Below are positions 10,980-61,202 of a stretch of 64,000 nt of DNA, one piece after another (within the stretch, counting starts at the first letter, position 1; every line of letters begins with the position of its first letter). Position numbers and translations under genes: made by a program. The DNA lies in IMG/VR virus record IMGVR_UViG_3300049215_000771, positions 1-64,000 of that record. One strand, given 5' to 3'. Under the pieces are notes generated by a model. It was not told where the DNA came from, made no database searches, and worked only from the letters and a program-made list of their open reading frames with translations.

Positions 10980-11593
10980 TGCTTCCCGATAAGCTGAACC
11001 TATATTTCGACGGATCGTGCGGGCCTAACAACCCAGGCGGCACGGCAGGATATGCGTGGCGACTGGTGGACCCCGATACCGGCAAAGTATTGGCCCAGGA
11101 CTGCGGCGAAGTATGCCGAGGCCCAACGGCGACGAACAATATCGGCGAGTGGGGCGCTGTCAAGGCGGGGCTGGAACACCTTGCCGAGAAGGGCTGGAAG
11201 GGAGAACTCAATATCCGAGGCGACAGCCAGTTGGTGATATACCAGCTAATCGGCAAGTATAAATGTCGCAAAGACACATTGATTCCCTTCTACGAGGCGT
11301 GTATGCTTATCTTGGAAGGCTGGACGTGGGACGCTCACTGGATTCCAAGGGAGCAAAACGATGAATGCGACCGAATGTCCAAGCAAGCCTACGCCCCTGG
11401 CAGACGAGGCACAGGAGATATACAACGACCTGTGGAACGATTGCAAAGAGATTCGGGAGATCATGGAGGAGTACGGTCTGAGTTGGTCGGACGTGGCAAG
11501 AAGTCTCGAAGAACACGGGCCACACAGCGGAATGGACCTGGACAAACCCAACCGCTGCCGGGTGAGGAGACGCCAGAAGTGGCGTTCGATTGA
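10979..11593 (+). CDS. rnhA: ribonuclease HI-like protein (second paralogue)
   Basis: LYFDGSC...ATNNIGEW...GDSQLVIYQL.G.YK...WIPREQNDECD. Confidence 0.88.
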   Translation: MLPDKLNLYFDGSCGPNNPGGTAGYAWRLVDPDTGKVLAQDCGEVCRGPTATNNIGEWGAVKAGLEHLAEKGWKGELNIRGDSQLVIYQLIGKYKCRKDTLIPFYEACMLILEGWTWDAHWIPREQNDECDRMSKQAYAPGRRGTGDIQRPVERLQRDSGDHGGVRSELVGRGKKSRRTRATQRNGPGQTQPLPGEETPEVAFD

Positions 11594-11600
11594 TGACTGA
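11361..11600 (+). CDS. RSIDD-tagged hypothetical protein
   Basis: Ends RRRQKWRSIDD*; overlaps the RNase H tail in another frame. Confidence 0.6.
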   Translation: MNATECPSKPTPLADEAQEIYNDLWNDCKEIREIMEEYGLSWSDVARSLEEHGPHSGMDLDKPNRCRVRRRQKWRSIDD

Positions 11601-11901
11601 ACAGGAACATGATGCCAGCCTGGGTCGTATGATACGACATTTCGCCAGGTTTCACGGCGGGGCGATCCTGACGTGTTTTATTCTGATCTGTTTCTTCGGC
11701 GATGGCCAGAAAACAGGACACTGGATCATGTGGACTAGCGTAGGCTGCGGGGCGGTAATCACCTATCTGTTGTGGAGAAGCGACAGAAGGCGTCGGAAGG
11801 AAGAAGAAATGTCCGGTGGGTGTGACGGAAGCACAAGGGTCTACGAAGCCCTTAGAACAGGTTCGACTCCTGTACCGGATACTGAAAGGAAAGATGGTTG
11901 A
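11593..11901 (+). CDS. membrane hypothetical protein
   Basis: Two hydrophobic segments; reads through tRNA-Arg. Confidence 0.5.
   Translation: MTEQEHDASLGRMIRHFARFHGGAILTCFILICFFGDGQKTGHWIMWTSVGCGAVITYLLWRSDRRRRKEEEMSGGCDGSTRVYEALRTGSTPVPDTERKDG
11811..11881 (+). tRNA. tRNA-Arg(ACG)
   Basis: AGGGT-CTACGAA-GCCCT; T loop TTCGACT. Confidence 0.85.
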
Positions 11902-12097
11902 CTACAACTACCCTTTCGTTTGCCCTCACTGCGGTAGCAAATGGTCGGCGGCTGAGTTTCTGGAGGAGCATATCTGGTATGACCACCAGGATGTAACGAA
12001 GGCTGAGATCGCCGATTGGTTCGCCAAGGAGTACAACCTCGATCCTGACGAAGTAAGCCAGGAAGATGTTGACCGGGAGTGGGAAGGTCGAGGATGA
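11894..12097 (+). CDS. C2H2 zinc-finger-like protein
   Basis: FVCPHCG......LEEHIWYDH. Confidence 0.6.
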   Translation: MVDYNYPFVCPHCGSKWSAAEFLEEHIWYDHQDVTKAEIADWFAKEYNLDPDEVSQEDVDREWEGRG

Positions 12098-12351
12098 AAC
12101 TTTTCTGCGTCAGTTGTTTGATTCGGAACACCAGACAGGCCATGTCTGGTTACATCTTCGCTGACGATGAAGAAGAAGCCCGGAAGATATTTCGACAATA
12201 CCTTCCAGTTGAACATGACATCGTGGTAGACGAGATCGAACAGGAGAAGGGTCTGCTGACGATGGTGACGAACGACCGGGCGGTACTGTTGAAGTATTAC
12301 CCGAAAACAACCGATAGGTGTACTGGAGGCACACAGCCCTGCGAAGGCTGA
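12094..12351 (+). CDS. hypothetical protein
   Basis: ATGA coupling. Confidence 0.5.
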   Translation: MKLFCVSCLIRNTRQAMSGYIFADDEEEARKIFRQYLPVEHDIVVDEIEQEKGLLTMVTNDRAVLLKYYPKTTDRCTGGTQPCEG

Positions 12352-12379
12352 GGAGCGGGTTCGACTCCCGCATCGGTTA
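12309..12379 (+). tRNA. tRNA-Arg(GCG)
   Basis: CAGCC-CTGCGAA-GGCTG; AACCGAT/ATCGGTT acceptor. Confidence 0.82.
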
Positions 12380-12380
12380 C

Positions 12381-12468
12381 TGCGACCAAATGCCAGAAGG
12401 GATTACATTCATTTGATAAGTGAAATGCTGGCCTAGCCAGCTAGTCTCTTCACCAGTTGTTGGTCGCA
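12381..12468 (+). ncRNA. free-standing Y-RNA-like element A (no tRNA body)
   Basis: TGCGACCAA/TTGGTCGCA terminal stem; ATGCCA-GAAGGGA-TTACAT...AG-TCTCTTC-ACCAGTTG; T-run follows. Confidence 0.7.
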
Positions 12469-12492
12469 ATTTTCCAACACGGGGCCGGAACA

Positions 12493-12834
12493 GTGGCGGT
12501 TAAAAGGAAAACGGTCGAATGTGAGTGTGGCGAAGTTTTCAACGACCTGCGCACTCATCTCCTGGGCAACCTAATCTTTGGTCCCTGGAAGGCCAAAACG
12601 CATCGTGTGAGGGAAACAAAGTCCAAAAGCGGTGGCGATATACTTGTCGCCGTGTGGGAACGAACAGTAGAATGTGGGAAGTGCGGCGGCGAACTGCTGA
12701 AGGAAAAACGACAGTACGAGTTGTCACCACCAGCAGATGTGACAAAACCAGAACCAATCAGCTACTACAGCAGTAGGGAGTTGATTGTCCGAGGGTCCGA
12801 GGGAGCAGATGGAATAATTCGGATGACGGCGTAG
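12493..12834 (+). CDS. Zn-ribbon hypothetical protein
   Basis: VECECGE...VECGKCG; start uncertain. Confidence 0.5.
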   Translation: MAVKRKTVECECGEVFNDLRTHLLGNLIFGPWKAKTHRVRETKSKSGGDILVAVWERTVECGKCGGELLKEKRQYELSPPADVTKPEPISYYSSRELIVRGSEGADGIIRMTA

Positions 12835-12844
12835 ATAGATTGAT

Positions 12845-12915
12845 GCCCGGTGGGTGTGACGGAAGCACGCAGCGCCTCGAACGCTGTAGAACGGGTTCGA
12901 CTCCTGTACCGGGTG
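12845..12915 (+). tRNA. tRNA-Arg(TCG), C33 variant
   Basis: CAGCG-CCTCGAA-CGCTG. Confidence 0.8.
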
Positions 12916-12988
12916 CTAAAGGTCGAGCATTTAAGTTCCTACGAGTAATCGTAGGCAGACTCTTTCTCGACCTTGAATCAGCGAGTGT

Positions 12989-13078
12989 ATTGTGGTCCAA
13001 ATGCTAAGGTGGGATTACATCTTTTCCAACAAGAAGAAGCCGAAAGGCAGTCTCATCACCAATTTGTTGGACCACAAT
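12989..13078 (+). ncRNA. free-standing Y-RNA-like element B (no tRNA body)
   Basis: ATTGTGGTCCAA/TTGGACCACAAT terminal stem; ATGCTAA-GGTGGGA-TTACAT...GCC-GAAA-GGC-AG-TCTCATC-ACCAATTTG; T-run follows. Confidence 0.72.
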
Positions 13079-13105
13079 TTTTCAACATGAAAGGTAGTGT
13101 GCTAT

Positions 13106-13183
13106 ATGGCTAAAGAAAAATCTCCGAAGAAGGAAAAAAAGAAGCCGAAGAAGAAGGACAAGGACAAGAAGCCGAGCAAGTAA
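13106..13183 (+). CDS. 25-aa Lys-rich peptide
   Basis: MAKEKSPKKEKKKPKKKDKDKKPSK*; AAGG upstream; stop abuts the next tRNA. Confidence 0.55.
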   Translation: MAKEKSPKKEKKKPKKKDKDKKPSK

Positions 13184-13277
13184 GCCCTTGTAGCTCAATT
13201 GGTAGAGCATCTGACTCTTGTGCTAGAAAGCACCCAAGTTAATCAGAGGGTTCAGGGTTCGAGTCCCTGCGAGGGCA
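13184..13277 (+). tRNA. tRNA-Lys(CTT) (or Asn GTT) with 21-nt insertion in the anticodon loop
   Basis: Normal acceptor, D and T arms; TCTGA-CTCTT[GTGCTAGAAAGCACCCAAGTT]AA-TCAGA; A73 favours Lys. Confidence 0.75.
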
Positions 13278-13279
13278 CT

Positions 13280-13707: not shown

Positions 13708-13709
13708 AT

Positions 13710-13783
13710 GGTGGTGTAGGTTAGCTGGCTAAACCGCCTCTCTCATAAGGAGGAGATCGTGGGTTCGAGTCCCACCACCACTA
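13710..13783 (+). tRNA. tRNA-Met/Ile2(CAT)
   Basis: CCTCT-CTCATAA-GGAGG. Confidence 0.85.
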
Positions 13784-13788: not shown

Positions 13789-14031
13789 ATGGACGACAAA
13801 ATCTTCAAGGTGCCGGACGCAGGCGAAAACGTCGTTATCCGAATCTTGCCGCCGAAGAAGGTTATGCCGTTTTATGCGACAAGGGTTCACAGGCTGCATC
13901 AGAAGAACAAAGCCTGCCCGATCTGTGAGTACGAGAAGCAATTGTCGGAAAAGCAGAAAGCCAATGGCGCAGGTGGAAGGAAGAAGAAGCGCTGGAGGAA
14001 TATCGACGAGCCTTGGGAGGCTTCGTCGTAG
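13789..14031 (+). CDS. gp32-like SSB N-terminal fragment with RSIDD-type tag
   Basis: GENVVIRILPP...H...CPICEY then KKKRWRNIDEPWEASS*. Confidence 0.6.
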   Translation: MDDKIFKVPDAGENVVIRILPPKKVMPFYATRVHRLHQKNKACPICEYEKQLSEKQKANGAGGRKKKRWRNIDEPWEASS

Positions 14032-17855: not shown

Positions 17856-18060
17856 GGATGCTAATTCGTCTATCCTCGAACGCTTCAAGGAGATGGAAGC
17901 GTCCTATGGTTACTCCTGGGACGAAGCTAACAACCAGCCTCGTCGCCTTGGTCAAACACATCGCTACATCGACGAGCCGTTCGAGGACTCCAGCACTGCC
18001 CAGCCGAAAGAGCCGAAGGAACATGGCGACCTTTGCTTCTGTAAAGACTGCCTGTCGTAA
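17836..18060 (+). CDS. hypothetical protein with RSIDD-like motif
   Basis: HRYIDEPFEDSS, C-terminal CFCKDC. Confidence 0.55.
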   Translation: MSQQRSKDANSSILERFKEMEASYGYSWDEANNQPRRLGQTHRYIDEPFEDSSTAQPKEPKEHGDLCFCKDCLS

Positions 18061-18098: not shown

Positions 18099-18464
18099 AT
18101 GGACAACATCGACGACTTGCTGAAGGATTTGTACAGCAAAGAACCCCGCAAGCGGCGCAAGAAGAAATATCGCAGCATTGACGACCCCTGGGAAGATTCA
18201 AGCGAATTCAAGCCCTTCAAAAAGCCGACAATCAAATCCTTCAAGCCTGTTGAGCGGTATTACTACAATGCCGTCATACGGGATCAAAGCGGGTCGATGG
18301 GTGAGGCGAAGTTGTTTTCTGTTGGGCCGACCTTGCACAAGAAGATCATGGAGGCTATGATTGGAACGGGGCAAATGCAAAGTATGTCAACGGTCGATCC
18401 TGTATCTGGAAACGAAGGCGCACATCCAGTTCGGCGGGATGGCCCCTCCAGTTCAGAAAGATGA
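18099..18464 (+). CDS. RSIDD-tagged protein with gp32-like SSB central fragment
   Basis: KKKYRSIDDPWEDSS then KPVERYYYNAVIR...KLFSVGPTLHKKIMEAM. Confidence 0.6.
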   Translation: MDNIDDLLKDLYSKEPRKRRKKKYRSIDDPWEDSSEFKPFKKPTIKSFKPVERYYYNAVIRDQSGSMGEAKLFSVGPTLHKKIMEAMIGTGQMQSMSTVDPVSGNEGAHPVRRDGPSSSER

Positions 18465-18710: not shown

Positions 18711-19058
18711 ATGATAATCACACCAATGCAACTGTGTCCTGGCATGGCCGAGGCTACCAGGCCCGAAAAGATCGAACTTCTTCGGGAGATCGACGCTGAG
18801 ATTGGTCGTCTCCAGAATAAGCGTATGAACAACACGCTGATGCAGCTTGTGGGTGTTGTTGTGATATTCGCCGCACAACTCATCAACATCTACTTCTGGC
18901 CGACGCCTACGGGCAACGAAGATGTTGATTTTTGCATCAAGTGGTCTTGGCCTGTCTGGATGTTGGTTTGGGGTGCGATCATTATCTGGCGTGGAAGTCG
19001 GATCAGCAAACAGATCAGGGACAAGATCGACGAATTCTTCATGGAACTGCAAACGTGA
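18711..19058 (+). CDS. membrane hypothetical protein
   Basis: Two hydrophobic segments. Confidence 0.6.
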   Translation: MIITPMQLCPGMAEATRPEKIELLREIDAEIGRLQNKRMNNTLMQLVGVVVIFAAQLINIYFWPTPTGNEDVDFCIKWSWPVWMLVWGAIIIWRGSRISKQIRDKIDEFFMELQT

Positions 19059-19483
19059 CGGATGATTGCAAAGTTTCCGAGAAAGCTGAATGCTATGGGC
19101 ATCTCGATCAGGCGCTTGGCCAGTATGAAAACCTCAGATTCCTTAAAGATATGAGGGTGCAGAATCGCCAATATATGGGCGACGGGATCGACGAGAAGTT
19201 TGTCTGGACGGTCAATTATGATCGTGGCATGAAAGTTTTGCGGAAATTGATTGCTTGCTACGTTCCCGAAGACCTGGTTGATTGTACTTTCAAGTACGTT
19301 GCTGCCATGTACGATATGGAGTGGCGGCGGTACGAGCAGGACAAGCAGGCTGGCAAGGTGAAGGCTGGTTCTGAAGATTACAGGAATTACTCCTGGCGTG
19401 GCAATGGGCCGAGGCCATACTTCGAGGAGTTGATTTCCACTTTCATGAAGAAAAAGAAGCATCGCAGCATTGATGACGAGTAG
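19055..19483 (+). CDS. RSIDD-tagged hypothetical protein
   Basis: Ends KKKKHRSIDDE*. Confidence 0.6.
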   Translation: MTDDCKVSEKAECYGHLDQALGQYENLRFLKDMRVQNRQYMGDGIDEKFVWTVNYDRGMKVLRKLIACYVPEDLVDCTFKYVAAMYDMEWRRYEQDKQAGKVKAGSEDYRNYSWRGNGPRPYFEELISTFMKKKKHRSIDDE

Positions 19484-25009: not shown

Positions 25010-25429
25010 GTGAAGTTTCAAGTTGGCGACATTGTGAGGATCAAAGATGGAGTGATTGGAGCGGGTCAGACAGGGATCATTGAAGAAATTAAGCCCTGGA
25101 ACATCAACAGCCCGCTTGCCGAACTTCGTGAGGATTTCCATTTCTGTGTCCTGGAAGATGGAGTTCGAGCCAAGTTCACGGCGGATTTGCTGGAGAAAGT
25201 TGGTGCCTTGAAGTACCGCCTGGGCGACAGGGTACTCATCAAGACGCCTGGGTTGACTGGTTACGGCGAAGTGGGAGTTGTTGTTGACCCTATTGACGAC
25301 TTGACCATTACTGTGGAACTTCCCAAAGTCCCTGGTCAATCCAACGAGCAGTGGCATCGGGTCAAATATACGGATGATGACATTCAGAAAGTCGGTCCTA
25401 GTTCCTGGAGGTCAATCGACGATGACTGA
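25010..25429 (+). CDS. tandem SH3/KOW-like protein with RSIDD tag
   Basis: FQVGDIVRI and YRLGDRVLI repeats; ends WRSIDDD*. Confidence 0.65.
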   Translation: MKFQVGDIVRIKDGVIGAGQTGIIEEIKPWNINSPLAELREDFHFCVLEDGVRAKFTADLLEKVGALKYRLGDRVLIKTPGLTGYGEVGVVVDPIDDLTITVELPKVPGQSNEQWHRVKYTDDDIQKVGPSSWRSIDDD

Positions 25430-25614: not shown

Positions 25615-25716
25615 GGGCGGGTAGCTCAGTGGCAGAGCGGCGATGACGCTGGACGGTTTTATAGTTGCCGGTTGCAGCTAATCGCAAGGTCGCTGGTTCA
25701 AATCCAGCCCCGCCCA
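25615..25716 (+). ncRNA. tRNA-like RNA with extended anticodon arm
   Basis: GGGCGGG/CCCGCCC, canonical D and T arms; GCGAT..ATCGC encloses ~36 nt instead of 7. Confidence 0.65.
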
Positions 25717-27216: not shown

Positions 27217-27314
27217 GGGAGCGTGGTGTAAAGGTAGCACACGAGACTTATAATCTCGGCCAAACGGTAGCGCCTGATTAGCGCTAGGTGAGGGTTCAAG
27301 TCCTTCCGCTCCTA
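27217..27314 (+). tRNA. tRNA-Ile(TAT) with oversized variable region
   Basis: CGAGA-CTTATAA-TCTCG; ~31-nt variable region with TAGCGC/GCGCTA hairpin. Confidence 0.75.
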
Positions 27315-27572: not shown

Positions 27573-27878
27573 ATGGCCTCCTGGACGGATTTCTTCAAGT
27601 TATGGTCGTATGCGAGAAAGAACCCAATGCCAGCAACAAGTGTAACGGGAATCGGGTCTAGTCTGAATACTGAAGGCAAAGGGTATTCGGTCATCATTCT
27701 GGTGGACGAGAAGGCTCACCACAAGATGACGGATGAAGTTTTCCGCAAGGCTGATTACGTCATCACAAAAAGCGGCAAGTACATCAAGACCCGTGATGGC
27801 CAACATCCGGTGATTTTGAACACGCCTGCCGAGCCGAAGGAAAAAGACAAAAAATATCGGAGCATCGACGACGCATAA
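27573..27878 (+). CDS. RSIDD-tagged hypothetical protein
   Basis: Ends KDKKYRSIDDA*. Confidence 0.65.
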   Translation: MASWTDFFKLWSYARKNPMPATSVTGIGSSLNTEGKGYSVIILVDEKAHHKMTDEVFRKADYVITKSGKYIKTRDGQHPVILNTPAEPKEKDKKYRSIDDA

Positions 27879-31433: not shown

Positions 31434-31862
31434 ATGAACAAGATTGAAAGAAAAGACGCCCATGCTTTTTTTGACAGCCTGATTGCTGGGGAGTCGCCTG
31501 AAGAAAAAATCGCCATCCTTCGAGACATCTTGGTGGATGAGTTTTGTTTCAATGGGATGCCAGAAGAAGTTTCTGAATTGGAAGCTGCTGTCTATGCCGT
31601 CATGAGCAGTCCGCAGGGGGCTTCGCAGAAGATTCAACAGATCAAGTTGGTTCGGGAAAAAACCGGCCTGGGCTTGAAGGAAGCGAAGGAATTCGTCGAA
31701 TCTTTGACGCCAGGGCATCCTTACTACGGCCAGAAGCAGTACCGTCAAATTGATCGGTTGTTGCCGACCCCGCAGGATTACACGGATACGGCGCTGGTGA
31801 ACCGGCTCAACAAGATCGCCAGGGCGTACAACAGGCCGGGAATCTGCTTTACAAACGCCTGA
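31434..31862 (+). CDS. ribosomal L7/L12 C-terminal-domain protein
   Basis: KIQQIKLVREKTGLGLKEAKEFVE. Confidence 0.75.
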   Translation: MNKIERKDAHAFFDSLIAGESPEEKIAILRDILVDEFCFNGMPEEVSELEAAVYAVMSSPQGASQKIQQIKLVREKTGLGLKEAKEFVESLTPGHPYYGQKQYRQIDRLLPTPQDYTDTALVNRLNKIARAYNRPGICFTNA

Positions 31863-32077: not shown

Positions 32078-33943
32078 ATGGCAAACAAGAATCTGTTCAG
32101 CAAGCCGGGCGCACAGGGCCAGCATGTCGGTAGCGTTCCGAACGCCGACACCAAGAACGAGGCTGGCGGCAAGGCTTATTCCATGTCGAACGAGGCTGCC
32201 CTGGCGCAGTTCGTGGCGACTTCGTGCCTCAACGGTACGTTCCACACGTCGGCCAAGGATCAGCTTGATACCGTCAAGAAGCTGCTCGCCGGCTGCACCC
32301 CGGAGTTCATCGGCAAGGTTGCCATCTACGGTCGCCAGAGCGCCTTCATGAAGGATTTGCCGGCATTGTGCATCAGCCATCTGGCTGCCGACAACGGTGG
32401 CGGCAAGAACGCTGGTGATCCGTCCCGTCGTTCCGCCCCGTCGTGGACGGGTGGTCCGACCACGCCTGAGCAGGAGGCGAAGCAGGAAGTTCTCAACAAG
32501 GTTTTCCCGCACGTCATTGATTCTGGCACGATGGTCCGTAACTTCGTGCAGATGATCCGTTCCGGCGTGCTGGGCCGCAAGTCGCTGGGCTACAGCCTCC
32601 GTCACCTGGTTCGCCAGTGGTTCGAGAACCGCAGCCCGGCTACGATCTTCCACAACAGCATCGGCAACAACCCGACGCTGGGCGAAGTGATCCGTATCGC
32701 CCGTCCGAAGCCGAACACCCCGGAGAAGGCGGCTTTGTTCGCCTACCTGACGGGGGCGAAGGTCGTTGATGACGCCGAGGGGAAGGTACTCCGTACCTAC
32801 TTCAAGGACGACAGCGACGGCCAGGTGAAGGTTGCCTACGAACACCCGTTCGCCAACCTGCCGCAGATCGTGCAGCAGTTCGAGGCGTGGAAGGCGGACC
32901 AGACGCTTCCTCAGCCGAAGCTGAACTTCCGTTTCCTGGACGGCATCAAGAAGCTGTCTACTGCCGAGTGGACGGAAATCGCTCGGAACGCCAACTGGTT
33001 GACCACGTTGAAGTCCATGAACACCTACAAGGAGCATGGCGTATTCGATCAGCCTGGTATGGTGGAACTGATCTCGGCTCGGCTGGCTGACGCCAACGAA
33101 GTCGCCAAGGTCCGGGTTTTCCCGTACCAGATTCTCATCGCCTACCTTGCCTCCGAGGGCAAGGCTCCGCAGAAGGTCCGTGATGCTTTGCACGACGCAC
33201 TGGAAGCTGCTACTCGCAACGTGCCGGTGTTGACGGGCAAGGTCTACATCTGTGTGGACGTGTCGGGTTCGATGACGACGGGTCGGGTTACGGGCGACCG
33301 TGGCTCGGCGACGACGGCGGCTCGTTGTATCGACGTGGCGGCGCTGTACGCAGCCTCGCTGCTTCGTGTCAACAAGAGCGCCGAAGTCATTCCGTTCGAG
33401 GTAGGTGTCGTCCTGCCGAGCAAGCTGACGTTGGAACCACGGGACACCGTGATGACCAACGCCCGCAAGCTGGCGTCCATCGGCGGCGGTGGTACGAACT
33501 GTTCGGCTCCGCTGAACATGCTCAACCAGCGCAACGCCAAGGGCGATGTCGTTGTCTTCGTCAGCGACTACGAGTCGTGGGCCGATGGTCCGAACGCTCA
33601 CAACGGCAAGGCTACGGCCATGCTGGAGCAGTGGGCCATCTTCAAGAAGCGCAACCCGGACGCCAAGCTGGTTTGCATCGACTTGACGCCTCGTGCCAAC
33701 CACCAGGTTGTCGAGCGCCCGGACATCCTCCAGGTTGGCGGTTTCTCCGACAACGTGTTCAACGTCGTGGCTCGGTTCGCCGAGAGCGGCTGGGACAAGA
33801 ACTTCTGGCTCCAGGAGATCAACAAGATCGACCTGGACGCCTTGGGCGACCTGTGTGGCTCGAAGGCGAAGAAGCAAGATGCAGTGCAGGTTGAAGTCAC
33901 CGAGGCTGTCGGCGGTGATGAAGAGTCCGAAGAACAGCAGTAA
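32078..33943 (+). CDS. Ro60/Rsr TROVE + vWA domain RNA-binding protein
   Basis: NEAGG.AY...LAQ...FPYQ.L.AY...VDVSGSM...GGGGTNCSAPL...VSD.ESW...GGFSD.VF. Confidence 0.93.
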   Translation: MANKNLFSKPGAQGQHVGSVPNADTKNEAGGKAYSMSNEAALAQFVATSCLNGTFHTSAKDQLDTVKKLLAGCTPEFIGKVAIYGRQSAFMKDLPALCISHLAADNGGGKNAGDPSRRSAPSWTGGPTTPEQEAKQEVLNKVFPHVIDSGTMVRNFVQMIRSGVLGRKSLGYSLRHLVRQWFENRSPATIFHNSIGNNPTLGEVIRIARPKPNTPEKAALFAYLTGAKVVDDAEGKVLRTYFKDDSDGQVKVAYEHPFANLPQIVQQFEAWKADQTLPQPKLNFRFLDGIKKLSTAEWTEIARNANWLTTLKSMNTYKEHGVFDQPGMVELISARLADANEVAKVRVFPYQILIAYLASEGKAPQKVRDALHDALEAATRNVPVLTGKVYICVDVSGSMTTGRVTGDRGSATTAARCIDVAALYAASLLRVNKSAEVIPFEVGVVLPSKLTLEPRDTVMTNARKLASIGGGGTNCSAPLNMLNQRNAKGDVVVFVSDYESWADGPNAHNGKATAMLEQWAIFKKRNPDAKLVCIDLTPRANHQVVERPDILQVGGFSDNVFNVVARFAESGWDKNFWLQEINKIDLDALGDLCGSKAKKQDAVQVEVTEAVGGDEESEEQQ

Positions 33944-34404: not shown

Positions 34405-34773
34405 ATGAGGCATATGATGCACGCTAAGTTGGTGTACGAACACGCCGGTCGTCCCACTTGGACGATCTGTGATGTTATCTTGTACGAGCCGAACGACGAG
34501 ACGGCGAAGGTTATTGCCGTGTTCACGCAGCTTGATGCCCACCGGGGCGTGAGCATCACCAACTCCGTCGAGAGCGCCTGTGCCGCTTTCTGTGAAGATC
34601 GCAACGTATACCCTGACCAGTGTGTTTTCATCGAGCGGTATGAACATTCGCCCGAAGACCTGGACATGATTTTTCTCGATGAGTATGGCCAGAATCCTCG
34701 CTGGAAACGTCTTGCAAAGGAGCAATCGGCGGGTATACTAGCTGTTTTGCCCAAACCTAGCCTCGTGGTGTAA
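34405..34773 (+). CDS. hypothetical protein
   Basis: G.SITN..E.......F.E.Y......P.W motif. Confidence 0.6.
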   Translation: MRHMMHAKLVYEHAGRPTWTICDVILYEPNDETAKVIAVFTQLDAHRGVSITNSVESACAAFCEDRNVYPDQCVFIERYEHSPEDLDMIFLDEYGQNPRWKRLAKEQSAGILAVLPKPSLVV

Positions 34774-34888
34774 CGGTAGCACAACGGTCCTCTGAAAAGG
34801 GATAGTCTCGACACTATTTGTCCTTCGGGAATGCCGTTGGGATTACATTCATAATCCGTGTGTCCTGGTTCGAGTCCAGGCGAGGCGA
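34759..34888 (+). ncRNA. tRNA-scaffolded Y-RNA-like chimera, copy 5
   Basis: GCCTCG/CGAGGC acceptor, D and T arms; AGTCTCGAC-ACTATTTG-TCC-TTCG-GGA-ATGCC-GTTGGGA-TTACAT; residual TTCATAA-TCCGT. Confidence 0.75.
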
Positions 34889-36314: not shown

Positions 36315-36992
36315 ATGAAAAACCGACCCTGGCTCGCATACCCAAAGAAGGAAGGCGAAAACATAAAGTTTCGCATTCTTCCCCCATTCCGGCCACTGAG
36401 CCTACAGTGGCATACGTTCGCTCGTGCTATTGATACAGCCTATCACACCTTCCAATGTCCCAGGCGGCTCGTTGCTGCTCGTTGGGAGGGGTATTGTCCG
36501 GCCTGTGAATACGTCAAAGAACTCTATGGTGCCGGCCTCGCAACTGGAGATATTGAAGAGGCCAAGCGACTGAGGGCGTGGGAGCGACATTACTACAACG
36601 TCTTCGACCGAGCGGATAATTTTCCCAAGGGGTTCGCAGCCTTCAAAGCTACACACCAACATCTTCTGACTTATATTCTTGGCGATCCTGACCAGGGCAT
36701 TGCAGCCTGTGGCGATATTACCGACATGACTACAGGTCGAGATGTCATTGTTCACTGTGATAAGATCATGGCGGGGAAGTACCCCAACTACCAGGTGATC
36801 TTACTTCAACCCGGCCCGTTCAATGAAGAAGCAGAAATTTGCAACTTTTTCAGTGAGTGGCCGGATGATTTTGAAGATGTGCCTCAAGACCACACCACTC
36901 AAATTGAATACGTTATCGAGCATTTCTATCGTCATTCGCCCAGGAAGCGACGTATGTGGCGTTCGATAGATGAACCCTGGTCTTCGCAATAA
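36315..36992 (+). CDS. divergent gp32-like ssDNA-binding protein with RSIDD tag
   Basis: KEGENIKFRILPP...CPACE...RHYYNV...GDITD...GRD...YPNY; ends RRMWRSIDEPWSSQ*. Confidence 0.7.
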   Translation: MKNRPWLAYPKKEGENIKFRILPPFRPLSLQWHTFARAIDTAYHTFQCPRRLVAARWEGYCPACEYVKELYGAGLATGDIEEAKRLRAWERHYYNVFDRADNFPKGFAAFKATHQHLLTYILGDPDQGIAACGDITDMTTGRDVIVHCDKIMAGKYPNYQVILLQPGPFNEEAEICNFFSEWPDDFEDVPQDHTTQIEYVIEHFYRHSPRKRRMWRSIDEPWSSQ

Positions 36993-55181: not shown

Positions 55182-55418
55182 ATGAAATTCTTCGTGGGCG
55201 ATACGGTTCACGTTTGCACGACCGATCCAGTGACAGGAATGTGGAAGCACCTATATGACGCTACTGTGGTGGAAGCGGACGAGTGGAAGGCTCGTGTCCT
55301 GGTGCGAGAGGGAACATATGGTTTCTGGTATTACCAGGAAGACGGCAAAAAGATTGGAATATCCACACGGTATATATCAAAGAAAATCGACGGGTGGAGA
55401 AGTATTGACGACGAGTAG
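55182..55418 (+). CDS. SH3-like small protein with RSIDD tag
   Basis: MKFFVGDTV...; ends GWRSIDDE*. Confidence 0.65.
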   Translation: MKFFVGDTVHVCTTDPVTGMWKHLYDATVVEADEWKARVLVREGTYGFWYYQEDGKKIGISTRYISKKIDGWRSIDDE

Positions 55419-55503: not shown

Positions 55504-55585
55504 GGGGTTATAGCTTAATGGAAGAGTGGCGAGGTAAGGCCCAAGTGGTCCCTCGCAGGTAGGGGTTCGACTCCCCTTAGCTCCA
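55504..55585 (+). ncRNA. tRNA-like RNA with enlarged anticodon loop
   Basis: GGGGTTA/TAGCTCC (Ala-like G3:U70), AGGGG-TTCGACT-CCCCT; GCGAGG..CCTCGC encloses 16 nt. Confidence 0.6.
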
Positions 55586-55660
55586 CTGAATGAAAGGCAT
55601 CCTGATACTTCTGATTCTCTCCCTAATCATCGCCATCACCGCAATCCTGACGAGGAAAAA

Positions 55661-56179
55661 ATGAGCGAACAGTTCACTTTGTTTTGGGGCGAGCGCCCTT
55701 TCTCCCAATGGTCGCCGTCTACCTTTACGGTCGATGGCGTAACCTACAACTGCGCCGAACAGTACATGATGGCGATGAAGGCTAAGTTCTTCAAGGACGA
55801 CGAGAAGCTGCAAGAAATTATGCAGGCCGAGCATCCCGCCGATCAGAAGCGCCTGGGTCGGCAAGTGCGCAATTTTGAGGCAACCCGTTGGGATGAAGTC
55901 GCCAGGGACATCGTGTACAAGGGCAACTACGAGAAATTCAGGCAGAACGCAGACATGCGAGAAAAACTGTTCGCCACGGCAGGAACGACCTTGGTGGAAG
56001 CCAGCCCGAAGGATAGGATATGGGGCATCGGTATGGGTGCCAAAAACCCCGATGCACTGGATCGCTCCAAATGGCGGGGTCGCAACTGGCTGGGCGAAGT
56101 TTTGACCAAAGTGCGAGACGATCTTCTCAAGGAGAAGGAGGACGGCCTTGTTCATGCTCACAAGAAAGTTCAGGGTTAA
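55661..56179 (+). CDS. NADAR family protein
   Basis: FSQW...AEQYMM..KA..F...K.LGR.V..F...KF.QN...LVEASP.DRIWGIG...G.N.LG. Confidence 0.92.
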   Translation: MSEQFTLFWGERPFSQWSPSTFTVDGVTYNCAEQYMMAMKAKFFKDDEKLQEIMQAEHPADQKRLGRQVRNFEATRWDEVARDIVYKGNYEKFRQNADMREKLFATAGTTLVEASPKDRIWGIGMGAKNPDALDRSKWRGRNWLGEVLTKVRDDLLKEKEDGLVHAHKKVQG

Positions 56180-57537: not shown

Positions 57538-58113
57538 ATGACGACGAAGGCATGTCCTAAGCGAGTCATTATCACGAAACCCGACTACTTGTTGGGCAAA
57601 ATGGGTGTTCTCAAAGGAGATCGCTTCAAGTACCCCAGCCAGAGTTTTTGGGTTCAACCTGTTCTCCTGGACGATGGGAGCGAAGTCCTAGCGCTGGCAT
57701 ACGAGGAGTGTATGGACGAAGCACCTATCAAAATTGATGTGGACCCAACTGTGGTCTACGACTACCAGGAATGTCTACAGCGAGCCATCTGTCATCATTG
57801 CGGCAAAGCGCTGCATTGGAAACTCGCCAACATCCTGAACAACAAAGAACATTTCCACGATGACCGTTTCTGCTATGCGGTTTGTTGTCTGACCAGGTAT
57901 TCGATGGTCCCGGAGAAGGTGCGGATTGTCGCATCACTCGATGTTCCTGAATGCACCGAGGACGACAAAGACGATGAACTGAAGATTGAGGATGAAGAGT
58001 TCCTTCGTGAATTGCAGAAGATGAATCTGCAAACCAAGGATCAGATCGACGACTTGCTCATTCTTTCTGGAGTGAAACCACGTCCCTATGAGGATGATGA
58101 CGATTTGAAGTGA
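57538..58113 (+). CDS. hypothetical protein
   Basis: CHHC and CC pairs; acidic tail. Confidence 0.55.
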   Translation: MTTKACPKRVIITKPDYLLGKMGVLKGDRFKYPSQSFWVQPVLLDDGSEVLALAYEECMDEAPIKIDVDPTVVYDYQECLQRAICHHCGKALHWKLANILNNKEHFHDDRFCYAVCCLTRYSMVPEKVRIVASLDVPECTEDDKDDELKIEDEEFLRELQKMNLQTKDQIDDLLILSGVKPRPYEDDDDLK

Positions 58114-58149: not shown

Positions 58150-58437
58150 ATGGGTCCAGAACAAGAAGACACCGGCCAGTTCAAACGCATCGCCATCCCC
58201 CTGGTCAGGAGGATATATCCTCAACTTATTGCGAACAAGATCGTAAGCGTTCAGCCGTTGTTGGGGCCGACAGGATTGACGTATTATCTGCGCCATCGGT
58301 ATTCGCAGAATTCACAAAGTCAGCCGCAACCGACAACTATTGACGGCGCTTTTGAGAATCCGCCGACCAGGAAGAAGCAGATCAAGAAGAAGAAATACCG
58401 TAGCATCGACGATCCGTGGAGCGCTGATGGTTCCTGA
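58150..58437 (+). CDS. major capsid protein (gp23-like) N-terminal fragment with RSIDD tag
   Basis: IPLVRRIYPQLIANKIVSVQPLLGPTGL.YYLR.RY then KKKKYRSIDDPW. Confidence 0.75.
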   Translation: MGPEQEDTGQFKRIAIPLVRRIYPQLIANKIVSVQPLLGPTGLTYYLRHRYSQNSQSQPQPTTIDGAFENPPTRKKQIKKKKYRSIDDPWSADGS

Positions 58438-58696
58438 TGACAGTCAAATTCGGGACGCCGTAGAAACCTGTTTCGATGAAGGTACGCAGGACGCCATGAA
58501 GTACCTGAAGGAATACGGCGAGGAAGAATTCAAGAAGGTTCTCCAGGAGGAACCGCCGCCCGGCGTCGGTTTCCATCCTGGGAGTCTTCTTGACAAGTTG
58601 CGCCAGTGGAACGGCGTATTCAAAGCCAAGATGGAAGATGCCAAACGTGGCAAGAAACGCCGCCGTACCATCTGGCGCAGCATCGACGCAAGGTAG
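58427..58696 (+). CDS. RSIDD-tagged hypothetical protein
   Basis: Ends KKRRRTIWRSIDAR*. Confidence 0.6.
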   Translation: MVPDDSQIRDAVETCFDEGTQDAMKYLKEYGEEEFKKVLQEEPPPGVGFHPGSLLDKLRQWNGVFKAKMEDAKRGKKRRRTIWRSIDAR

Positions 58697-58725
58697 TTTA
58701 CAAATCTGTGTTTTCGTGGTATCAT
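58697..58725 (+). promoter_or_regulatory. sigma70-type promoter
   Basis: TTTACA-N17-TATCAT. Confidence 0.65.
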
Positions 58726-58750
58726 TCCGTTGAATACACACGGAGATACC

Positions 58751-59185
58751 ATGCCTACCAAACAAGTAATCGTGTGGCGGCAAGACCTGCAAAACGTCCC
58801 GAAGGGCAAATTCGGGGCGCAGATGGGTCATGCTGCCCATTTGTTCCTCACGGAGCAAGTCCGGGCCGAGTACGGCGGTAAGGGGCCGAAACTCCGTGCT
58901 GGCGAATCTGGCCGGGTTGAAATCCGTCTGACTCAGGCCGAGATGGATTGGATTCTTGGCAACTACCGCAAGGTGGTGGCCTGGGTCCGTTCCGAAGAAG
59001 ATTTGATGACGGTTTACAACAAGGCCAAGGAACTCGGTCTGCCCGTGCATCTCGTCACCGACGATGGGTTGACGGTTTTCGACAAACCCACGAAGACTTG
59101 TATTTCCATCGGTCCTGCCGAGGAATCGGAAGTGGACAAGGTGACGGGAGAGGCCGGGCCTCTTGGAAAGTTGAAGTTGCTATGA
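58751..59185 (+). CDS. pth2: peptidyl-tRNA hydrolase, Pth2 family
   Basis: KQVIV.R.DL...KGK..AQ.GHA...KVV...V.D.G.T....T.T...IGP....VDKVTG...L.LL. Confidence 0.9.
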   Translation: MPTKQVIVWRQDLQNVPKGKFGAQMGHAAHLFLTEQVRAEYGGKGPKLRAGESGRVEIRLTQAEMDWILGNYRKVVAWVRSEEDLMTVYNKAKELGLPVHLVTDDGLTVFDKPTKTCISIGPAEESEVDKVTGEAGPLGKLKLL

Positions 59186-59526
59186 GCCAGGATTTTCTCT
59201 GGACATTCTTCAACCAACTCCCCATTGGGGCGAAGTTCAAGATGTCCGATGATCCCCAGCCGGTGTACGAGAAGCGCAGCGAGTACCAGGCGTGGCGGCG
59301 GACGGACCCTTGGGGATTGGGACAGCCCGGCAAGACCATGATGGTTCTTGACGGGCATGTTGAAGTGATGCCCGTCGATGTCGCCGAATGTTACTGGTGT
59401 GGTGGCGAATTCGCCATGATCGACCTGGTGTATATTCCAAGGAAGGGTGACAATCCCGACGCCGAGCCTCGCCGATTCATGTGTGCCGATTGTGATTTAG
59501 GCGATGCAGATGAAAGCAAACCATGA
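59182..59526 (+). CDS. hypothetical protein with C-terminal Zn finger
   Basis: CYWC...CADC. Confidence 0.55.
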   Translation: MSQDFLWTFFNQLPIGAKFKMSDDPQPVYEKRSEYQAWRRTDPWGLGQPGKTMMVLDGHVEVMPVDVAECYWCGGEFAMIDLVYIPRKGDNPDAEPRRFMCADCDLGDADESKP

Positions 59527-60050
59527 TTCCGGTCTTTGTTACCGACAAACACGCCCCACAAACCAGCCCTTGTTATTTCTGCTACACTGGCTCATCTGGC
59601 GTGGCAGAAGCCTTCAAGTCCTGGGATGATGGTCTGGCGAGATTTGTTGCCGATATTCTTCGGGAAGGCCCGGAGGCCAAACCGACGCATCAGATATGCA
59701 GAAGTTGCTATGAAGCCGGCAAACATCGCCAGCGTAGTCGATGCCAGAACTGTGGGAAATTAGCAAGCCTGCTGCGAACGGCCAACGATTCGATGACGAA
59801 TACTTGGGCGGATATTGGCCCGGACCATGTTATCTTGTGTGAAGTATGCCAGAAGGTGTACTACGACACGGACAAGCGACAATGGACGTTCAAATATGAC
59901 GGCGGCGGCAAGCTGATAATACCGTATACGAGCAAGGTTCCGCTGACGGACGAAGACATTCTCCTGCTTAGACGGCTATGGCGGGAGTACCCGGACTGGA
60001 AAACCAGGAACAAGATGCCGACATTGCACCGGAGGATCGACGATGATTAG
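59523..60050 (+). CDS. Cys-rich protein with RSIDD-type tag
   Basis: Several CxxC; ends LHRRIDDD*. Confidence 0.6.
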   Translation: MIPVFVTDKHAPQTSPCYFCYTGSSGVAEAFKSWDDGLARFVADILREGPEAKPTHQICRSCYEAGKHRQRSRCQNCGKLASLLRTANDSMTNTWADIGPDHVILCEVCQKVYYDTDKRQWTFKYDGGGKLIIPYTSKVPLTDEDILLLRRLWREYPDWKTRNKMPTLHRRIDDD

Positions 60051-60660
60051 GGGCACCAGACACTTATTCGGTGCAGAGGCTCGATTATTTCACGAAATAA
60101 CGAGCGAGTTGCGTAGAATAACTATACAGGAAGGCTACCAGGAGTTCATCCCCTCCGCACTGTGCGAGGTGGAAGTCTTCACAGGGAAGGCGGGGCCGGA
60201 AATCCTGGGTCAGATGTACACGTTCAAGGACAAGAAGGAACGTGAAATATGCCTTGTGCCAGAGATAACTGCTGTGGTACAAAGTATATATACTGCCGAC
60301 TGGTCCAAGTATCTCCCCAGGCCGGTGAAAGTGTTCTACCTGGCCCGATGTTACAGGTACGAGCGGCCACAGGAAGGTCGCTATAGGGAGTTCTGGCAGT
60401 TCGGTGTTGAGAACTTGGGCGGCAAGACATCCAAGGAAGAGATGATTGATCTGCTCAGGAAGTCTTTGGAGGCGTGTGGCATCGAGTTTGTCATCAACGA
60501 TGGCGTCAAACGAGGGCTGAATTACTACGTTGAAGATGGCTTCGAGGCTGAAGTGGCAGCACTTGGCGCTCAGAAGCAAGTGGCCGGTGGAGGCCGGTAT
60601 AGTGAAGGCATCGGATGGGCCATTGGAGTTGATAGGCTGATGCTGGCGAAACAAAAATGA
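60043..60660 (+). CDS. hisS: histidyl-tRNA synthetase-like catalytic core (no anticodon-binding domain)
   Basis: RGT, MYTFKD, L.PE.TA, YRYERPQ.GRYREF.QFGVE, RGLNYY, GGGRY, GWAIGVDRL. Confidence 0.85.
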   Translation: MIRGTRHLFGAEARLFHEITSELRRITIQEGYQEFIPSALCEVEVFTGKAGPEILGQMYTFKDKKEREICLVPEITAVVQSIYTADWSKYLPRPVKVFYLARCYRYERPQEGRYREFWQFGVENLGGKTSKEEMIDLLRKSLEACGIEFVINDGVKRGLNYYVEDGFEAEVAALGAQKQVAGGGRYSEGIGWAIGVDRLMLAKQK

Positions 60661-61202
60661 CGTATGCTATTCTGGTCGTGATGCTGATGGGATTCGGCTA
60701 CATTGGCTGGAAGCTGCACAGGTTGGAGAAACGATTGGCTGCAAATGAAGCAGGCCAGAAAACCAACAATGAGCAGATAGTTCAGGTCAATCAGCGAGTT
60801 GTTGCAACAAATCAGTTGTTTGGCAACCTCGACACGAAGATTGACAAGACGAACAAGAAGGTCGGTGAAATCGACAAACGCACAACTCCTGGTGCGATGA
60901 CGAAAGAACAACTCGACTTCAAGGAGGACTTGGAGAAGAGATGGAAAACTACGATGGAGAAGGCTAGGACGGACCTGGCCGAGCAGCTTGTTCTGGATAA
61001 GGACAAGTTGAAGGCCGATGTAGAAAAGTACAAAGCCGGGTTTGAGGCAACGGTCAAGAAGGCATATGATGAAGCGTGTGCCAAGATCGACTTCGAGCGG
61101 GTAGAGTACAAGAAAACCATCACCAAGAAGCGGCGAGAGTTTAGCCGCAGCCACAAGGCGGTAACACCGCAAAGAAGTTTCAGGTCGATAGATGATGAAT
61201 AA
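60657..61202 (+). CDS. membrane-anchored coiled-coil protein with RSIDD tag
   Basis: N-terminal TM helix; ends RSFRSIDDE*. Confidence 0.65.
   Translation: MTYAILVVMLMGFGYIGWKLHRLEKRLAANEAGQKTNNEQIVQVNQRVVATNQLFGNLDTKIDKTNKKVGEIDKRTTPGAMTKEQLDFKEDLEKRWKTTMEKARTDLAEQLVLDKDKLKADVEKYKAGFEATVKKAYDEACAKIDFERVEYKKTITKKRREFSRSHKAVTPQRSFRSIDDE

What the first reader, a model, noticed from the sequence alone, without database searches (positions are those of the whole stretch)
11361..61202. Shared 'RSIDD' peptide tag on at least 13 proteins
Seen: the motif [WYHF]-R-[SNYR]-I-D-[DEA](-P-W/F), usually after a basic stretch, occurs in ORFs starting at 11361, 13789, 17836, 18099, 19055, 25010, 27573, 36315, 55182, 58150, 58427, 59523 and 60657. 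In 11 of them it is at or within a few residues of the C-terminus. The bodies are mostly unrelated (SH3-like, Zn-finger, membrane coiled coil, capsid and SSB fragments). Codons differ (Ser = TCG, AGC, TCA, AGT; Arg = CGT, CGC, AGG, AGA, CGG), so selection is on the peptide and it is not a DNA repeat. Inference: a short linear motif docking many adaptors onto one hub, such as a protease/unfoldase, a modifying enzyme, or a compartment or packaging receptor. I do not recognise it as a described signal.
Basis: partly seen in the sequence, partly recalled or inferred. Interest (0 to 1): 0.92.

Follow-up and report, generated by a model that had tools for sequence, protein, structure and literature searches.

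The report
Shared peptide tag in a megaphage
A giant bacteriophage (genome of at least 533 kb) puts the same ~8-residue peptide, [W/Y/H/F]-R-S-I-D-D(-P-W), on the flexible end of roughly a tenth of its small proteins, many of them copied pieces of its own capsid-building proteins; this looks like an undescribed address label that docks them all onto one still unknown partner.

Summary
All 13 motif sites exist, all in + strand coding frames (0.06 expected); 11 lie 0-7 residues from the stop (P=3e-11). Arg uses six codons, Ser both codon families, and flanking DNA is unrelated, so selection acts on the peptide. The window is the first 64 kb of a 533-673 kb megaphage; 16 more tags occur in ~115 kb fetched elsewhere in that genome (about 100 extrapolated). 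The tag also occurs in a small subclade of relatives, but not in 200 kb sampled from a 595-kb relative or in cellular proteins.

New finding: many carriers are 57-130 aa mini-proteins built as a copied segment of a larger phage protein, a K/P-rich linker, then the tag. Five recurring blocks of the intact T4-type major capsid protein, the tail of a head-core protein, a probably inactive prohead-protease core and a PrkA fragment are represented. The capsid pieces are old and under purifying selection.

Best reading: a terminal docking motif on bait-linker-tag adaptors (about 0.85). The receptor is unidentified. I favour prohead or capsid targeting, analogous to the T4 capsid targeting sequence (0.35), over protease delivery (0.2) or another hub (0.25). 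No paper contains the motif.

The parts
11361..11600 (+). 79-aa ORF ending ...RRRQK-WRSIDD-stop (tag 11580-11597)
   Evidence: no family hit
13789..14031 (+). 80-aa ORF, a copy of the N-terminal part of the SSB-like protein 36315, ending ...RKKKR-WRNIDEPW-EASS-stop (tag 13993-14016)
   Evidence: 29% identity over 65 aa to 36315 residues 14-78; recovered by the tail HMM as P0010
17836..18060 (+). 74-aa ORF with an internal variant HRYIDEPF (17959-17982), 27 residues before the stop
18099..18464 (+). 121-aa ORF with the tag near the N-terminus (RKRRKKK-YRSIDDPW, 18168-18191)
   Evidence: shows that the tag also occurs at the N-terminal end
18932..19483 (+). 142-183 aa ORF (start 18932 TTG or 19055 GTG) ending ...MKKKK-HRSIDDE-stop (tag 19460-19477)
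   Evidence: orphan body
25010..25429 (+). 139-aa ORF ending ...GPSS-WRSIDDD-stop (tag 25406-25423); two beta-rich repeats, SH3/KOW-like by eye only
   Evidence: no family or phage hit
27573..27878 (+). 101-aa ORF ending ...KEKDKK-YRSIDDA-stop (tag 27855-27872)
36315..36992 (+). 225-aa SSB-like protein ending ...RKRRM-WRSIDEPW-SSQ-stop (tag 36957-36980)
   Evidence: PHROG 1192 ssDNA-binding protein, E 1.8e-4; no homologue in 5.8e9 proteins
55182..55418 (+). 78-aa ORF ending ...KKIDG-WRSIDDE-stop (tag 55395-55412)
57538..58113 (+). 191-aa ORF without the RSIDD tag; its C-terminus copies the scaffold protein's C-terminal peptide (DLL[VI]LSGVK). It lies directly upstream of the tagged capsid N-arm piece
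   Evidence: the peptide occurs only here and at the end of the scaffold genes (L032:9064-9960, L023:3347-4243)
58150..58437 (+). 95-aa mini-protein: copy of major capsid protein residues 55-102 (87.5% identity), Q/P/K-rich linker, then KKKK-YRSIDDPW-SADGS-stop (tag 58396-58419)
   Evidence: Pfam Gp23 profile 3-62, E 1.4e-14; mapping to own MCP; pS 0.75 and pN 0.14 against the parent
58427..58696 (+). 89-aa ORF ending ...KKRRRTI-WRSIDAR-stop (tag 58673-58690)
   Evidence: gene called in the public assembly
59523..60050 (+). 175-aa Cys-rich (Zn-ribbon-like) ORF ending ...MPTL-HRRIDDD-stop (tag 60027-60044)
   Evidence: weak Zn-ribbon Pfam hits
60657..61202 (+). 181-aa ORF with a hydrophobic N-terminal segment and a coiled-coil-like body, ending ...PQRS-FRSIDDE-stop (tag 61179-61196)
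   Evidence: hydropathy 1.47 at residues 1-19

Best explanation
The motif is a genuine short linear docking peptide, an 'address tag': aromatic-R-(S)-I-D-(D/E), often followed by P-W. It sits at the end of a flexible K/P/R-rich linker, usually at the C-terminus and occasionally at the N-terminus, on about 10% of the proteins sampled from this megaphage. The carriers are small, mutually unrelated 'bait' modules. In the conserved core set the bait is a copied segment of one of the phage's own head-assembly proteins. Each carrier therefore works as a bivalent adaptor: the bait binds whatever normally binds that segment, and the tag binds one common receptor. Shown here: peptide-level selection, terminal and linker placement, the bait-linker-tag architecture, the head-protein origin of many baits, and restriction to one phage subclade. 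Inferred: all tags bind one receptor (my confidence about 0.85). Further inferred, and my preferred specific mechanism: the receptor belongs to the prohead (scaffolding core or inner shell), so the tag acts as a capsid-targeting signal that loads many diverse small proteins into, or tethers them to, the assembling head. This would be the functional counterpart of the T4 capsid targeting sequence, in a phage with a T4-type head module. The confidence value below refers to this specific version.
For: Peptide-level selection, not DNA-level. Enrichment and terminal bias. Tag at either terminus: 18099 ORF and L021:16317-16796. Linker enriched in K 3.2x, P 2x and R 1.6x. Orthologous mini-ORFs in other phages keep the tag while the linker diverges. 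Head-protein baits: five recurring MCP blocks (55-102, 237/252-313, 318-368, 400/409-448, 438-475) mapped on the intact own MCP; the C-terminal 'NPYVP' region of the 663-aa head-module protein; a prohead-protease (S77) core lacking the Ser motif. 14 of 27 small hits of a tail HMM against 1.84e9 proteins derive from two head proteins. The pieces are old and constrained (pS 0.75-0.97, pN 0.13-0.34). Pieces and tag co-occur: mature-MCP pieces found outside the MCP gene in relatives all carry the tag or a variant (HRSITDPW, RRTIDDFW), while the 595-kb relative LR756511.1 has neither near its head module. The phage has a T4-type head module: Peptidase_S77, coiled-coil scaffold, Gp23 MCP. In T-even phages a diverse set of small internal proteins shares only a short capsid targeting sequence (PMC3012670). 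A neighbouring ORF copies the scaffold's C-terminal peptide, which shows that terminal head-protein peptides are reused modularly here.
Against: No receptor was identified and no binding or packaging evidence exists. The tag is C-terminal in 26 of 29 cases, whereas the T4 signal is N-terminal and removed by the protease. The tag's I-D-D, with Pro at the next position, does not look like the probable protease site in this clade's MCP (L-x-N-E) or like T4's L/I-x-E. The 21 kb around the true head genes hold no tag. Tagged genes instead sit in translation and replication neighbourhoods. Two carriers have hydrophobic N-terminal segments that fit poorly with encapsidated cargo. The copied MCP blocks are integral parts of the fold rather than obvious surface peptides, so what they bind is unclear. 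The phage encodes ClpP and a MIDAS-competent vWA protein, which are equally untested alternative receptors.
Confidence: 0.35

Rival explanations
1. Adaptor or degron for an energy-dependent protease. The tag docks on an unfoldase or adaptor site (as the SspB XB peptide docks on ClpX) or is itself a degron. Tagged proteins, and whatever their baits hold, are then delivered for degradation, for example to time early regulators, remove misfolded capsid protein, or destroy host sensors that bind capsid, protease or SSB segments.
For: The architecture body - flexible linker - short terminal peptide, usable at either terminus, is that of known AAA+ protease adaptors and degrons (established knowledge). 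The phage encodes a ClpP-family protease 2.3 kb from a tagged PrkA fragment. Many carriers are fragments that are unlikely to fold alone. Tagged genes lie among replication and translation genes rather than late structural genes.
Against: No ClpX/ClpA-like partner was seen in the ~190 kb examined. The motif resembles no known degron class (from memory, not tested). Long-term purifying selection on about 100 proteins that exist only to be degraded needs a further rationale.
Confidence: 0.2
2. Docking onto a different hub: a MIDAS-containing vWA protein (the tag's I-D-x-P resembles integrin-type acidic ligand motifs), a replication or DNA-associated hub (analogous to SSB tails), a cytoskeletal or compartment receptor, or a modifying enzyme that recognises the tag.
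For: The window encodes a Ro60-vWA protein with an intact DxSxS...T...D MIDAS. An SSB-like protein and its fragment carry the tag. The tandem tag array follows the PolA-like, NUDIX and DnaB genes. Carriers include probable membrane-anchored and Zn-ribbon proteins, consistent with a general localisation system.
Against: The evidence is purely circumstantial, since no co-occurrence or binding test was possible. The resemblance to integrin ligand motifs is recalled from memory and could be coincidence. It does not explain why head-protein segments dominate the conserved core set.
Confidence: 0.25
3. Co-translational signal: the peptide acts inside the ribosome (arrest, termination control or bypass, like TnaC or the T4 gene 60 nascent peptide) in a phage that remodels translation.
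For: Most tags are close to stop codons. The window is a translation island with 38+ tRNAs, at least five aminoacyl-tRNA synthetase-like genes, PTH2 and RF-like genes. There is a loose W-x-x-I-D resemblance to TnaC (from memory).
Against: The distance to the stop varies from 0 to 12 residues, with cases at 27, 92 and 143. N-terminal tags exist. All three stop codons are used. No conserved downstream RNA was found.
Confidence: 0.03
4. Not a functional peptide: a DNA repeat, a mobile 3' cassette or a chance match.
For: None beyond the recurrence itself.
Against: Third codon positions are near random while positions 1-2 are invariant. Arg and Ser switch between codon families. Downstream DNA is unrelated. 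There are 0 hits in the five other frames, and shuffles give 0.06.
Confidence: 0.01

Closest known systems
T4 capsid targeting sequence (CTS) of the internal proteins IPI/IPII/IPIII and Alt
   Same: A short conserved peptide is the only feature shared by a diverse set of small proteins in a phage with a gp21-type protease, gp22-type scaffold and gp23-type capsid protein (PMC3012670; head module shown). The carrier genes lie outside the head gene cluster.
   Different: The CTS is N-terminal, about 10 residues, unrelated in sequence, and removed by the prohead protease at L/I-x-E. The tag here is C-terminal in 26 of 29 cases, has Asp rather than Glu and Pro after it, occurs on about 100 proteins rather than a handful, and many carriers are pieces of head proteins.
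Encapsulin cargo-loading peptides
   Same: A C-terminal ~10-residue peptide after a flexible linker targets unrelated proteins to the inside of an HK97-fold shell.
   Different: The consensus differs (Gly/Ser/Leu-rich); there are one or a few enzyme cargos encoded next to the shell gene; no self-fragment baits.
SspB-type ClpX adaptors and terminal degrons
   Same: Substrate-binding body, long disordered linker, short terminal docking peptide; the signals work at a free terminus.
   Different: No sequence resemblance; the cognate unfoldase was not found; the number of carriers is far larger.
Shared C-terminal tails that dock on a replication hub (bacterial SSB tip, T7 gp2.5/gp4 acidic tails, T4 clamp-binding tails)
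   Same: Several unrelated proteins share a short acidic/aromatic C-terminal peptide for one partner; an SSB-like protein carries the tag here.
   Different: Those tails need the terminal aromatic residue or carboxylate, or a hydrophobic clamp motif. Here 0-12 residues follow the motif, N-terminal copies exist, and most carriers are not replication proteins.
Poxvirus ankyrin/PRANC (F-box-like) protein families
   Same: A virus encodes many adaptors with variable binding modules and one common C-terminal module that plugs into a single hub.
   Different: PRANC is a folded ~30-40 residue domain that binds a eukaryotic host ligase; there is no homology or shared host biology.

Membership tests
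T4-type capsid targeting sequence | Phage has the T4-type prohead module (S77 protease, coiled-coil scaffold, Gp23-family MCP) | tested here: met
   L032 and L023 head modules; Peptidase_S77 E 1.3e-25; MCP 478 aa Gp23 family
T4-type capsid targeting sequence | Signal is the N-terminal ~10 residues of the carrier | tested here: not met
   26 of 29 tags are within 0-8 residues of the C-terminus, one is internal and two are N-terminal
T4-type capsid targeting sequence | Signal ends in the prohead-protease site (L/I-x-E followed by a small residue) and is cleaved off | tested here: inconclusive
   The tag has I-D-D (E in 4 of 29) followed by Pro, Asp, Glu, Ala, Arg, Trp or the stop. The clade's MCP propeptide appears to end at L-x-N-E. 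Cleavage cannot be tested in silico
T4-type capsid targeting sequence | Carriers are found inside proheads and virions | not testable with these tools
   No proteomic data; uncultured phage
Encapsulin cargo-loading peptide | C-terminal short peptide after a flexible linker | tested here: met
Encapsulin cargo-loading peptide | Gly/Ser/Leu-type consensus, with the cargo gene adjacent to the shell gene | tested here: not met
   The consensus is aromatic-R-S-I-D-D-P-W. No tag occurs in the 21 kb around the MCP gene
AAA+ protease adaptor peptide or degron | Unstructured terminal peptide that works at a free end | tested here: met
   Terminal position at either end; K/P-rich linker
AAA+ protease adaptor peptide or degron | Cognate protease and unfoldase present | tested here: inconclusive
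   ClpP found (PF00574). No ClpX/ClpA-like gene in the ~190 kb with annotations. About 70% of the genome was not examined
SSB-tip or T7 gp2.5-type acidic tail | The aromatic residue is the very last residue, with a free carboxylate | tested here: not met
   In long-form tags 2-12 residues follow the Trp of P-W; short forms end in D/E/A/R; N-terminal copies exist
Type VII secretion signal YxxxD/E | Y-x-x-x-D/E after a helix-turn-helix of a ~100-aa WXG-like substrate, in a host with T7SS | tested here: inconclusive
   The pattern [WYHF]-x-x-x-D fits, but R and I are also invariant and the bodies are unrelated and include beta-rich, Zn-ribbon and 225-aa proteins. The host hint is Acidobacteriota; T7SS presence was not tested
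DNA repeat or mobile cassette | Conservation at the nucleotide level, including flanks | tested here: not met
   Third positions are random, codon families switch, and downstream identity is 0.26
MIDAS (vWA) acidic ligand motif | Hydrophobic-Asp-x-Pro type ligand plus a MIDAS-competent vWA receptor in the same genome | tested here: inconclusive
   The tag contains I-D-D/E-P in long forms. The Ro60-vWA at 32078-33943 has DVSGS...GGGT...SD. Binding is not testable here, and the resemblance to integrin ligands is from memory

The most novel reading that the evidence does not exclude
The phage runs a protein-fragment-guided targeting system. It keeps short copies of segments of essential phage proteins (capsid protein, head-core protein, prohead protease, SSB, PrkA) as baits and fuses each to one universal handle. 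A single effector or receptor (protease, sequestering body or capsid) is thereby directed to whatever recognises those segments, for example host immune sensors that detect capsid or SSB proteins, or the proteins of competing phages and satellites. This would be a modular bait-and-handle logic not described for any virus of bacteria.
Probability: 0.15. Interest if true: 0.92.

Novelty: new variant of a known kind. Interest (0 to 1): 0.8.

Why it matters
Short targeting peptides are the handles by which viruses organise their proteomes, and they are directly usable tools: the T4 capsid targeting sequence and encapsulin peptides are already used to load cargo. This is a sharply defined 6-8 residue signal with about 100 natural carriers in one uncultured megaphage. 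It offers (i) an entry point into the cell biology of the largest phages, where nearly all small proteins are unannotated; (ii) a ready-made list of proteins that share one fate or location; and (iii) an unexpected class of conserved mini-genes that are copies of segments of the capsid protein and other head proteins, which points to regulation of assembly, cargo tethering or counter-defence by molecular mimicry. Identifying the receptor would make all of these testable.

Tried and rejected
- **Megablast, window 36-44 kb against phages:** no match.
- **Literature search for the motif strings:** nothing relevant. Broader searches on huge phages found no description.
- **The search for homologous proteins scored on the tail region only:** returned only the query, because the tool needs several shared 5-mers. 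Replaced by a tail HMM search.
- **SSB identity of 36315:** PDB phmmer gave only noise; there are no homologues in 5.8e9 proteins; the single-sequence AlphaFold model has pLDDT 37 and is unusable, so no fold search was run.
- **AlphaFold model of the own MCP with 20 close relatives:** pLDDT 42 and unusable, so the copied blocks could not be assigned to structural elements.
- **tblastn of three orphan tagged bodies against 50,697 phage records:** no match.
- **T4 late promoter TATAAATA:** absent from the window, so expression timing could not be inferred.
- **Intergenic k-mer enrichment:** gave a motif that turned out to be a shared insert in tRNA genes, not a promoter.
- **Split gene, intron or intein reading of the capsid pieces:** rejected. 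An intact 478-aa MCP exists. The pieces are scattered, have their own starts, are saturated at synonymous sites against the parent and have no intein-sized extensions.
- **Prohead-protease cleavage site reading:** not favoured (Asp rather than Glu, Pro next, many tags end at the motif).
- **Cellular origin of the tail:** the genome-contig scan found true tags only on phage-like contigs binned with Acidobacteriota.
- **Look-up of window:10554-10976:** failed because the gene start differs in the public gene calls.

Full report
**What the window is.** The 64-kb window has 53% GC, about 100 genes almost all on the + strand, and at least 38 tRNA genes (Rfam adds three more). It encodes Ile/Val-type, Glu/Gln-type, Met-type and class II aminoacyl-tRNA synthetases, a Ro60-vWA protein, an L7/L12-like protein, PTH2, and short RF-1-like and HisRS-like proteins. 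Exact-protein look-ups place it at positions 1-64,000 of IMGVR_UViG_3300049215_000771 (532,729 bp), which corresponds to a 673,178-bp scaffold in ENA/JGI. It is an uncultured megaphage with no close relative among deposited phages. The nearest is the unannotated 595-kb LR756511.1, with 81.5% capsid-protein identity.

All are in + strand coding frames and none in the other five frames. In 103 called proteins the motif occurs 12 times against 0.06 expected from residue shuffles. Ten of these 12 lie within 8 residues of the C-terminus (P = 3e-11). Over 29 tags from this genome, the first two codon positions of R, I, D and D are invariant while third positions are near random. Arg uses six codons and Ser both codon families. 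The 60 nt after the stop codons are unrelated. Selection therefore acts on the peptide, and a DNA repeat or mobile cassette is excluded. The bodies are unrelated: 2 of 406 pairs are similar.

**The motif is sharply defined.** A PSSM built from the six core positions separates true tags (at least 16 bits) from everything else, with nothing in between, across ~178 kb. The consensus is [K/R-rich, P-rich linker]-[Y/W/H/F]-R-S-I-D-[D/E]. It is followed either by 0-1 residue and the stop, or by P-W plus 2-12 residues. R, I and the first D are invariant. The 12 residues upstream are enriched in K (3.2x), P (2x) and R (1.6x) and depleted in hydrophobic residues, as expected for a flexible linker. The tag can also sit at the N-terminus, as in ORF 18099-18464 and L021:16317-16796. 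This argues for a docking motif rather than a signal that needs a free carboxylate or acts at termination.

**It is genome-wide and lineage-specific.**
- A degenerate DNA scan of IMG/VR and a tail-alignment scan found further tags in this contig near 117, 122, 159, 238, 245-247, 351, 454 and 518-524 kb. Together these are 16 more tags in ~115 kb, including a tandem array of five tagged mini-ORFs.
- Extrapolation gives roughly 90-110 carriers in the genome.
- True tags also occur in a handful of related contigs, and on three contigs binned with Acidobacteriota MAGs that are evidently phage sequence.
- They are rare around the capsid genes of 80 relatives: 5 in 1.02 Mb.
- They are absent from 200 kb sampled from LR756511.1 and from genuine cellular proteins.
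- A profile of 32 tails searched against 1.84 billion representative proteins returned 28 hits at E <= 1e-3. Twenty-six are 38-126 aa proteins with the tag at or near the C-terminus, one is the 225-aa window protein 36315, and one is a spurious 2270-aa hit.

**The unexpected part: what the carriers are.**
- ORF 58150-58437 is not a degraded capsid gene. It is a 95-aa mini-protein made of capsid-protein residues 55-102, a linker and the tag.
- The phage has an intact 478-aa Gp23-family capsid protein within a normal T4-type head module: a 663-aa core protein, an S77 protease, a coiled-coil scaffold and the MCP.
- Other tagged mini-ORFs, scattered over the genome, copy MCP residues 237-310, 318-368, 400-448 and 438-463. 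One 160-aa protein carries the tag at its N-terminus, followed by a diverged copy of MCP 307-478.
- The same blocks recur in other phages. The blocks abut rather than overlap, and they skip the propeptide and the insertion domain.
- Against the parent gene the pieces are saturated at synonymous sites (pS 0.75-0.97) but conserved in protein (pN 0.13-0.34). They are old and under purifying selection.
- Orthologous C-terminal pieces in three phages keep the bait and the tag while the linker diverges. More distant relatives carry variant tails (HRSITDPW, RRTIDDFW) on the same mini-ORFs.
- Further tagged fragments are a family copying the 'NPYVP' C-terminal region of the 663-aa head protein, an S77 protease core that lacks both termini and the GISSRG serine motif, a PrkA C-domain fragment, and a copy of the N-terminal part of the SSB-like protein 36315.
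- 14 of the 27 small HMM hits derive from two head proteins. The profile included some bait residues, which may inflate this share slightly.
- Next to 58150, the untagged ORF 57538-58113 ends in a copy of the scaffold protein's C-terminal peptide. This is a second example of a reused terminal peptide.

**Mechanism.** The data support a modular architecture of bait, flexible basic linker and universal tag. Because the tag is invariant across unrelated carriers and works at either end, the simplest reading is that it docks on one receptor (about 0.85). Because the conserved baits mimic segments of head-assembly proteins, the ancestral role is probably coupled to whatever binds those segments.

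- **Prohead or capsid targeting (0.35, preferred).** In T-even phages a highly diverse set of small internal proteins shares only a short capsid targeting sequence that loads them into the scaffolding core (PMC3012670). This phage has the same type of head module.
- **Points against it.** The tag is C-terminal. It does not resemble the likely protease site. It is absent from the head-gene neighbourhood. Tagged genes lie among translation and replication genes. Two carriers look membrane-anchored.
- **Delivery to a protease (0.2).** This fits the architecture and the presence of ClpP, but no unfoldase was seen.
- **Other hubs (0.25).** These include the MIDAS of the Ro60-vWA protein. They remain open.
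- **Excluded or nearly so.** A ribosomal nascent-peptide role (0.03) and DNA-level explanations (0.01) are effectively ruled out.
- **Counter-defence.** A decoy reading of the baits is compatible with any receptor and is given as the novel case.

**Comparison with known systems.** The tag works like the T4 capsid targeting sequence, encapsulin cargo-loading peptides or SspB-type docking peptides. It fails at least one defining feature of each (position, consensus, cleavage site or gene context), so it is not a member of any of them. No paper in the searchable library contains the motif. I rate it a new variant of a known kind (a shared terminal targeting or docking peptide). The tagged self-fragment mini-proteins have no described counterpart that I know of.

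**Limits.** Only about 30% of the genome was read. Both structure predictions failed. The SSB and SH3-like labels are weak or untested. Expression timing is unknown. No protein-peptide complex prediction was possible with these tools, so the receptor is inferred, not shown.

Noticed in passing
window 942, 4935, 6283, 12399, 13011, 14852, 34839 (core GGGATTACA); also 25615-25716, 27217-27314, 34759-34888: Seven copies of a conserved ~60-nt element, each followed by a tRNA-like T-arm. Rfam-130 nt tRNAs here that ARAGORN missed. These are probably tRNA genes sharing a long insert (an intron or an unusual variable arm). Leu, Ser, Tyr, Lys, His, Phe and Cys tRNAs are absent from the ARAGORN list.
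   Followed up: partly
L119, L123 (JAYVUD010000059.1 / JAYVUD010000002.1) and L121 (CAVSYW010000005.1, a 933,350-bp contig): The only 'cellular' genomes with true tags are MAG contigs binned as Chloracidobacterium and Acidobacteriaceae. They carry the same tagged capsid pieces, so they are phage sequence. This hints at an Acidobacteriota host. The 933-kb contig could be an even larger relative or a mis-assembly.
   Followed up: partly
window 57538-58113: This 191-aa Cys-containing protein has a last stretch (DLLILSGVK...) that copies the C-terminal peptide of the scaffold protein. It lies directly upstream of the tagged capsid N-arm piece, mirroring the scaffold-then-MCP gene order of the true head module.
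   Followed up: partly
L028 14930-15058; L057 12659-12811; L014 4450-4647: Relatives carry stand-alone untagged ~65-aa copies of the capsid protein propeptide (MCP residues 4-48), ending at the likely maturation site (…L-x-N-E).
   Followed up: no
window 32078-33943; 13184-13278 and 55504-55586: A Ro60-vWA protein with an intact MIDAS motif sits in the tRNA island. Two odd tRNA-like genes with four-base 'anticodons' could be Y-RNA-like partners.
   Followed up: no
window 55661-56179; L126 15832-16515 and 17002-17643: There is an ADP-ribose theme: NADAR in the window, and Macro and microbial PARG domains flanking the N-terminally tagged capsid-like protein elsewhere in the genome.
   Followed up: no
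window 60043-60660, 63200-63778, 31434-31862: Short versions of translation proteins occur without the tag: a 205-aa HisRS-like protein, a 192-aa RF-1/PCRF protein, and a 142-aa protein matching only part of the L7/L12 C-terminal domain.
   Followed up: no
L112 7080-7682 (scaffold ~248-251 kb): The genome has a ClpP-family protease gene, as well as CCA-adding/PolyA-polymerase, two more aminoacyl-tRNA synthetases and Peptidase_C39 and SprT-like genes, close to tagged ORFs.
   Followed up: no
L024:9587-10054 (contig ~238 kb): A tagged paralogue of the prohead protease keeps the conserved His-containing motif but has GFKMVG where the true proteases have GISSRG, and lacks both termini. It is probably a catalytically dead protease core.
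   Followed up: partly
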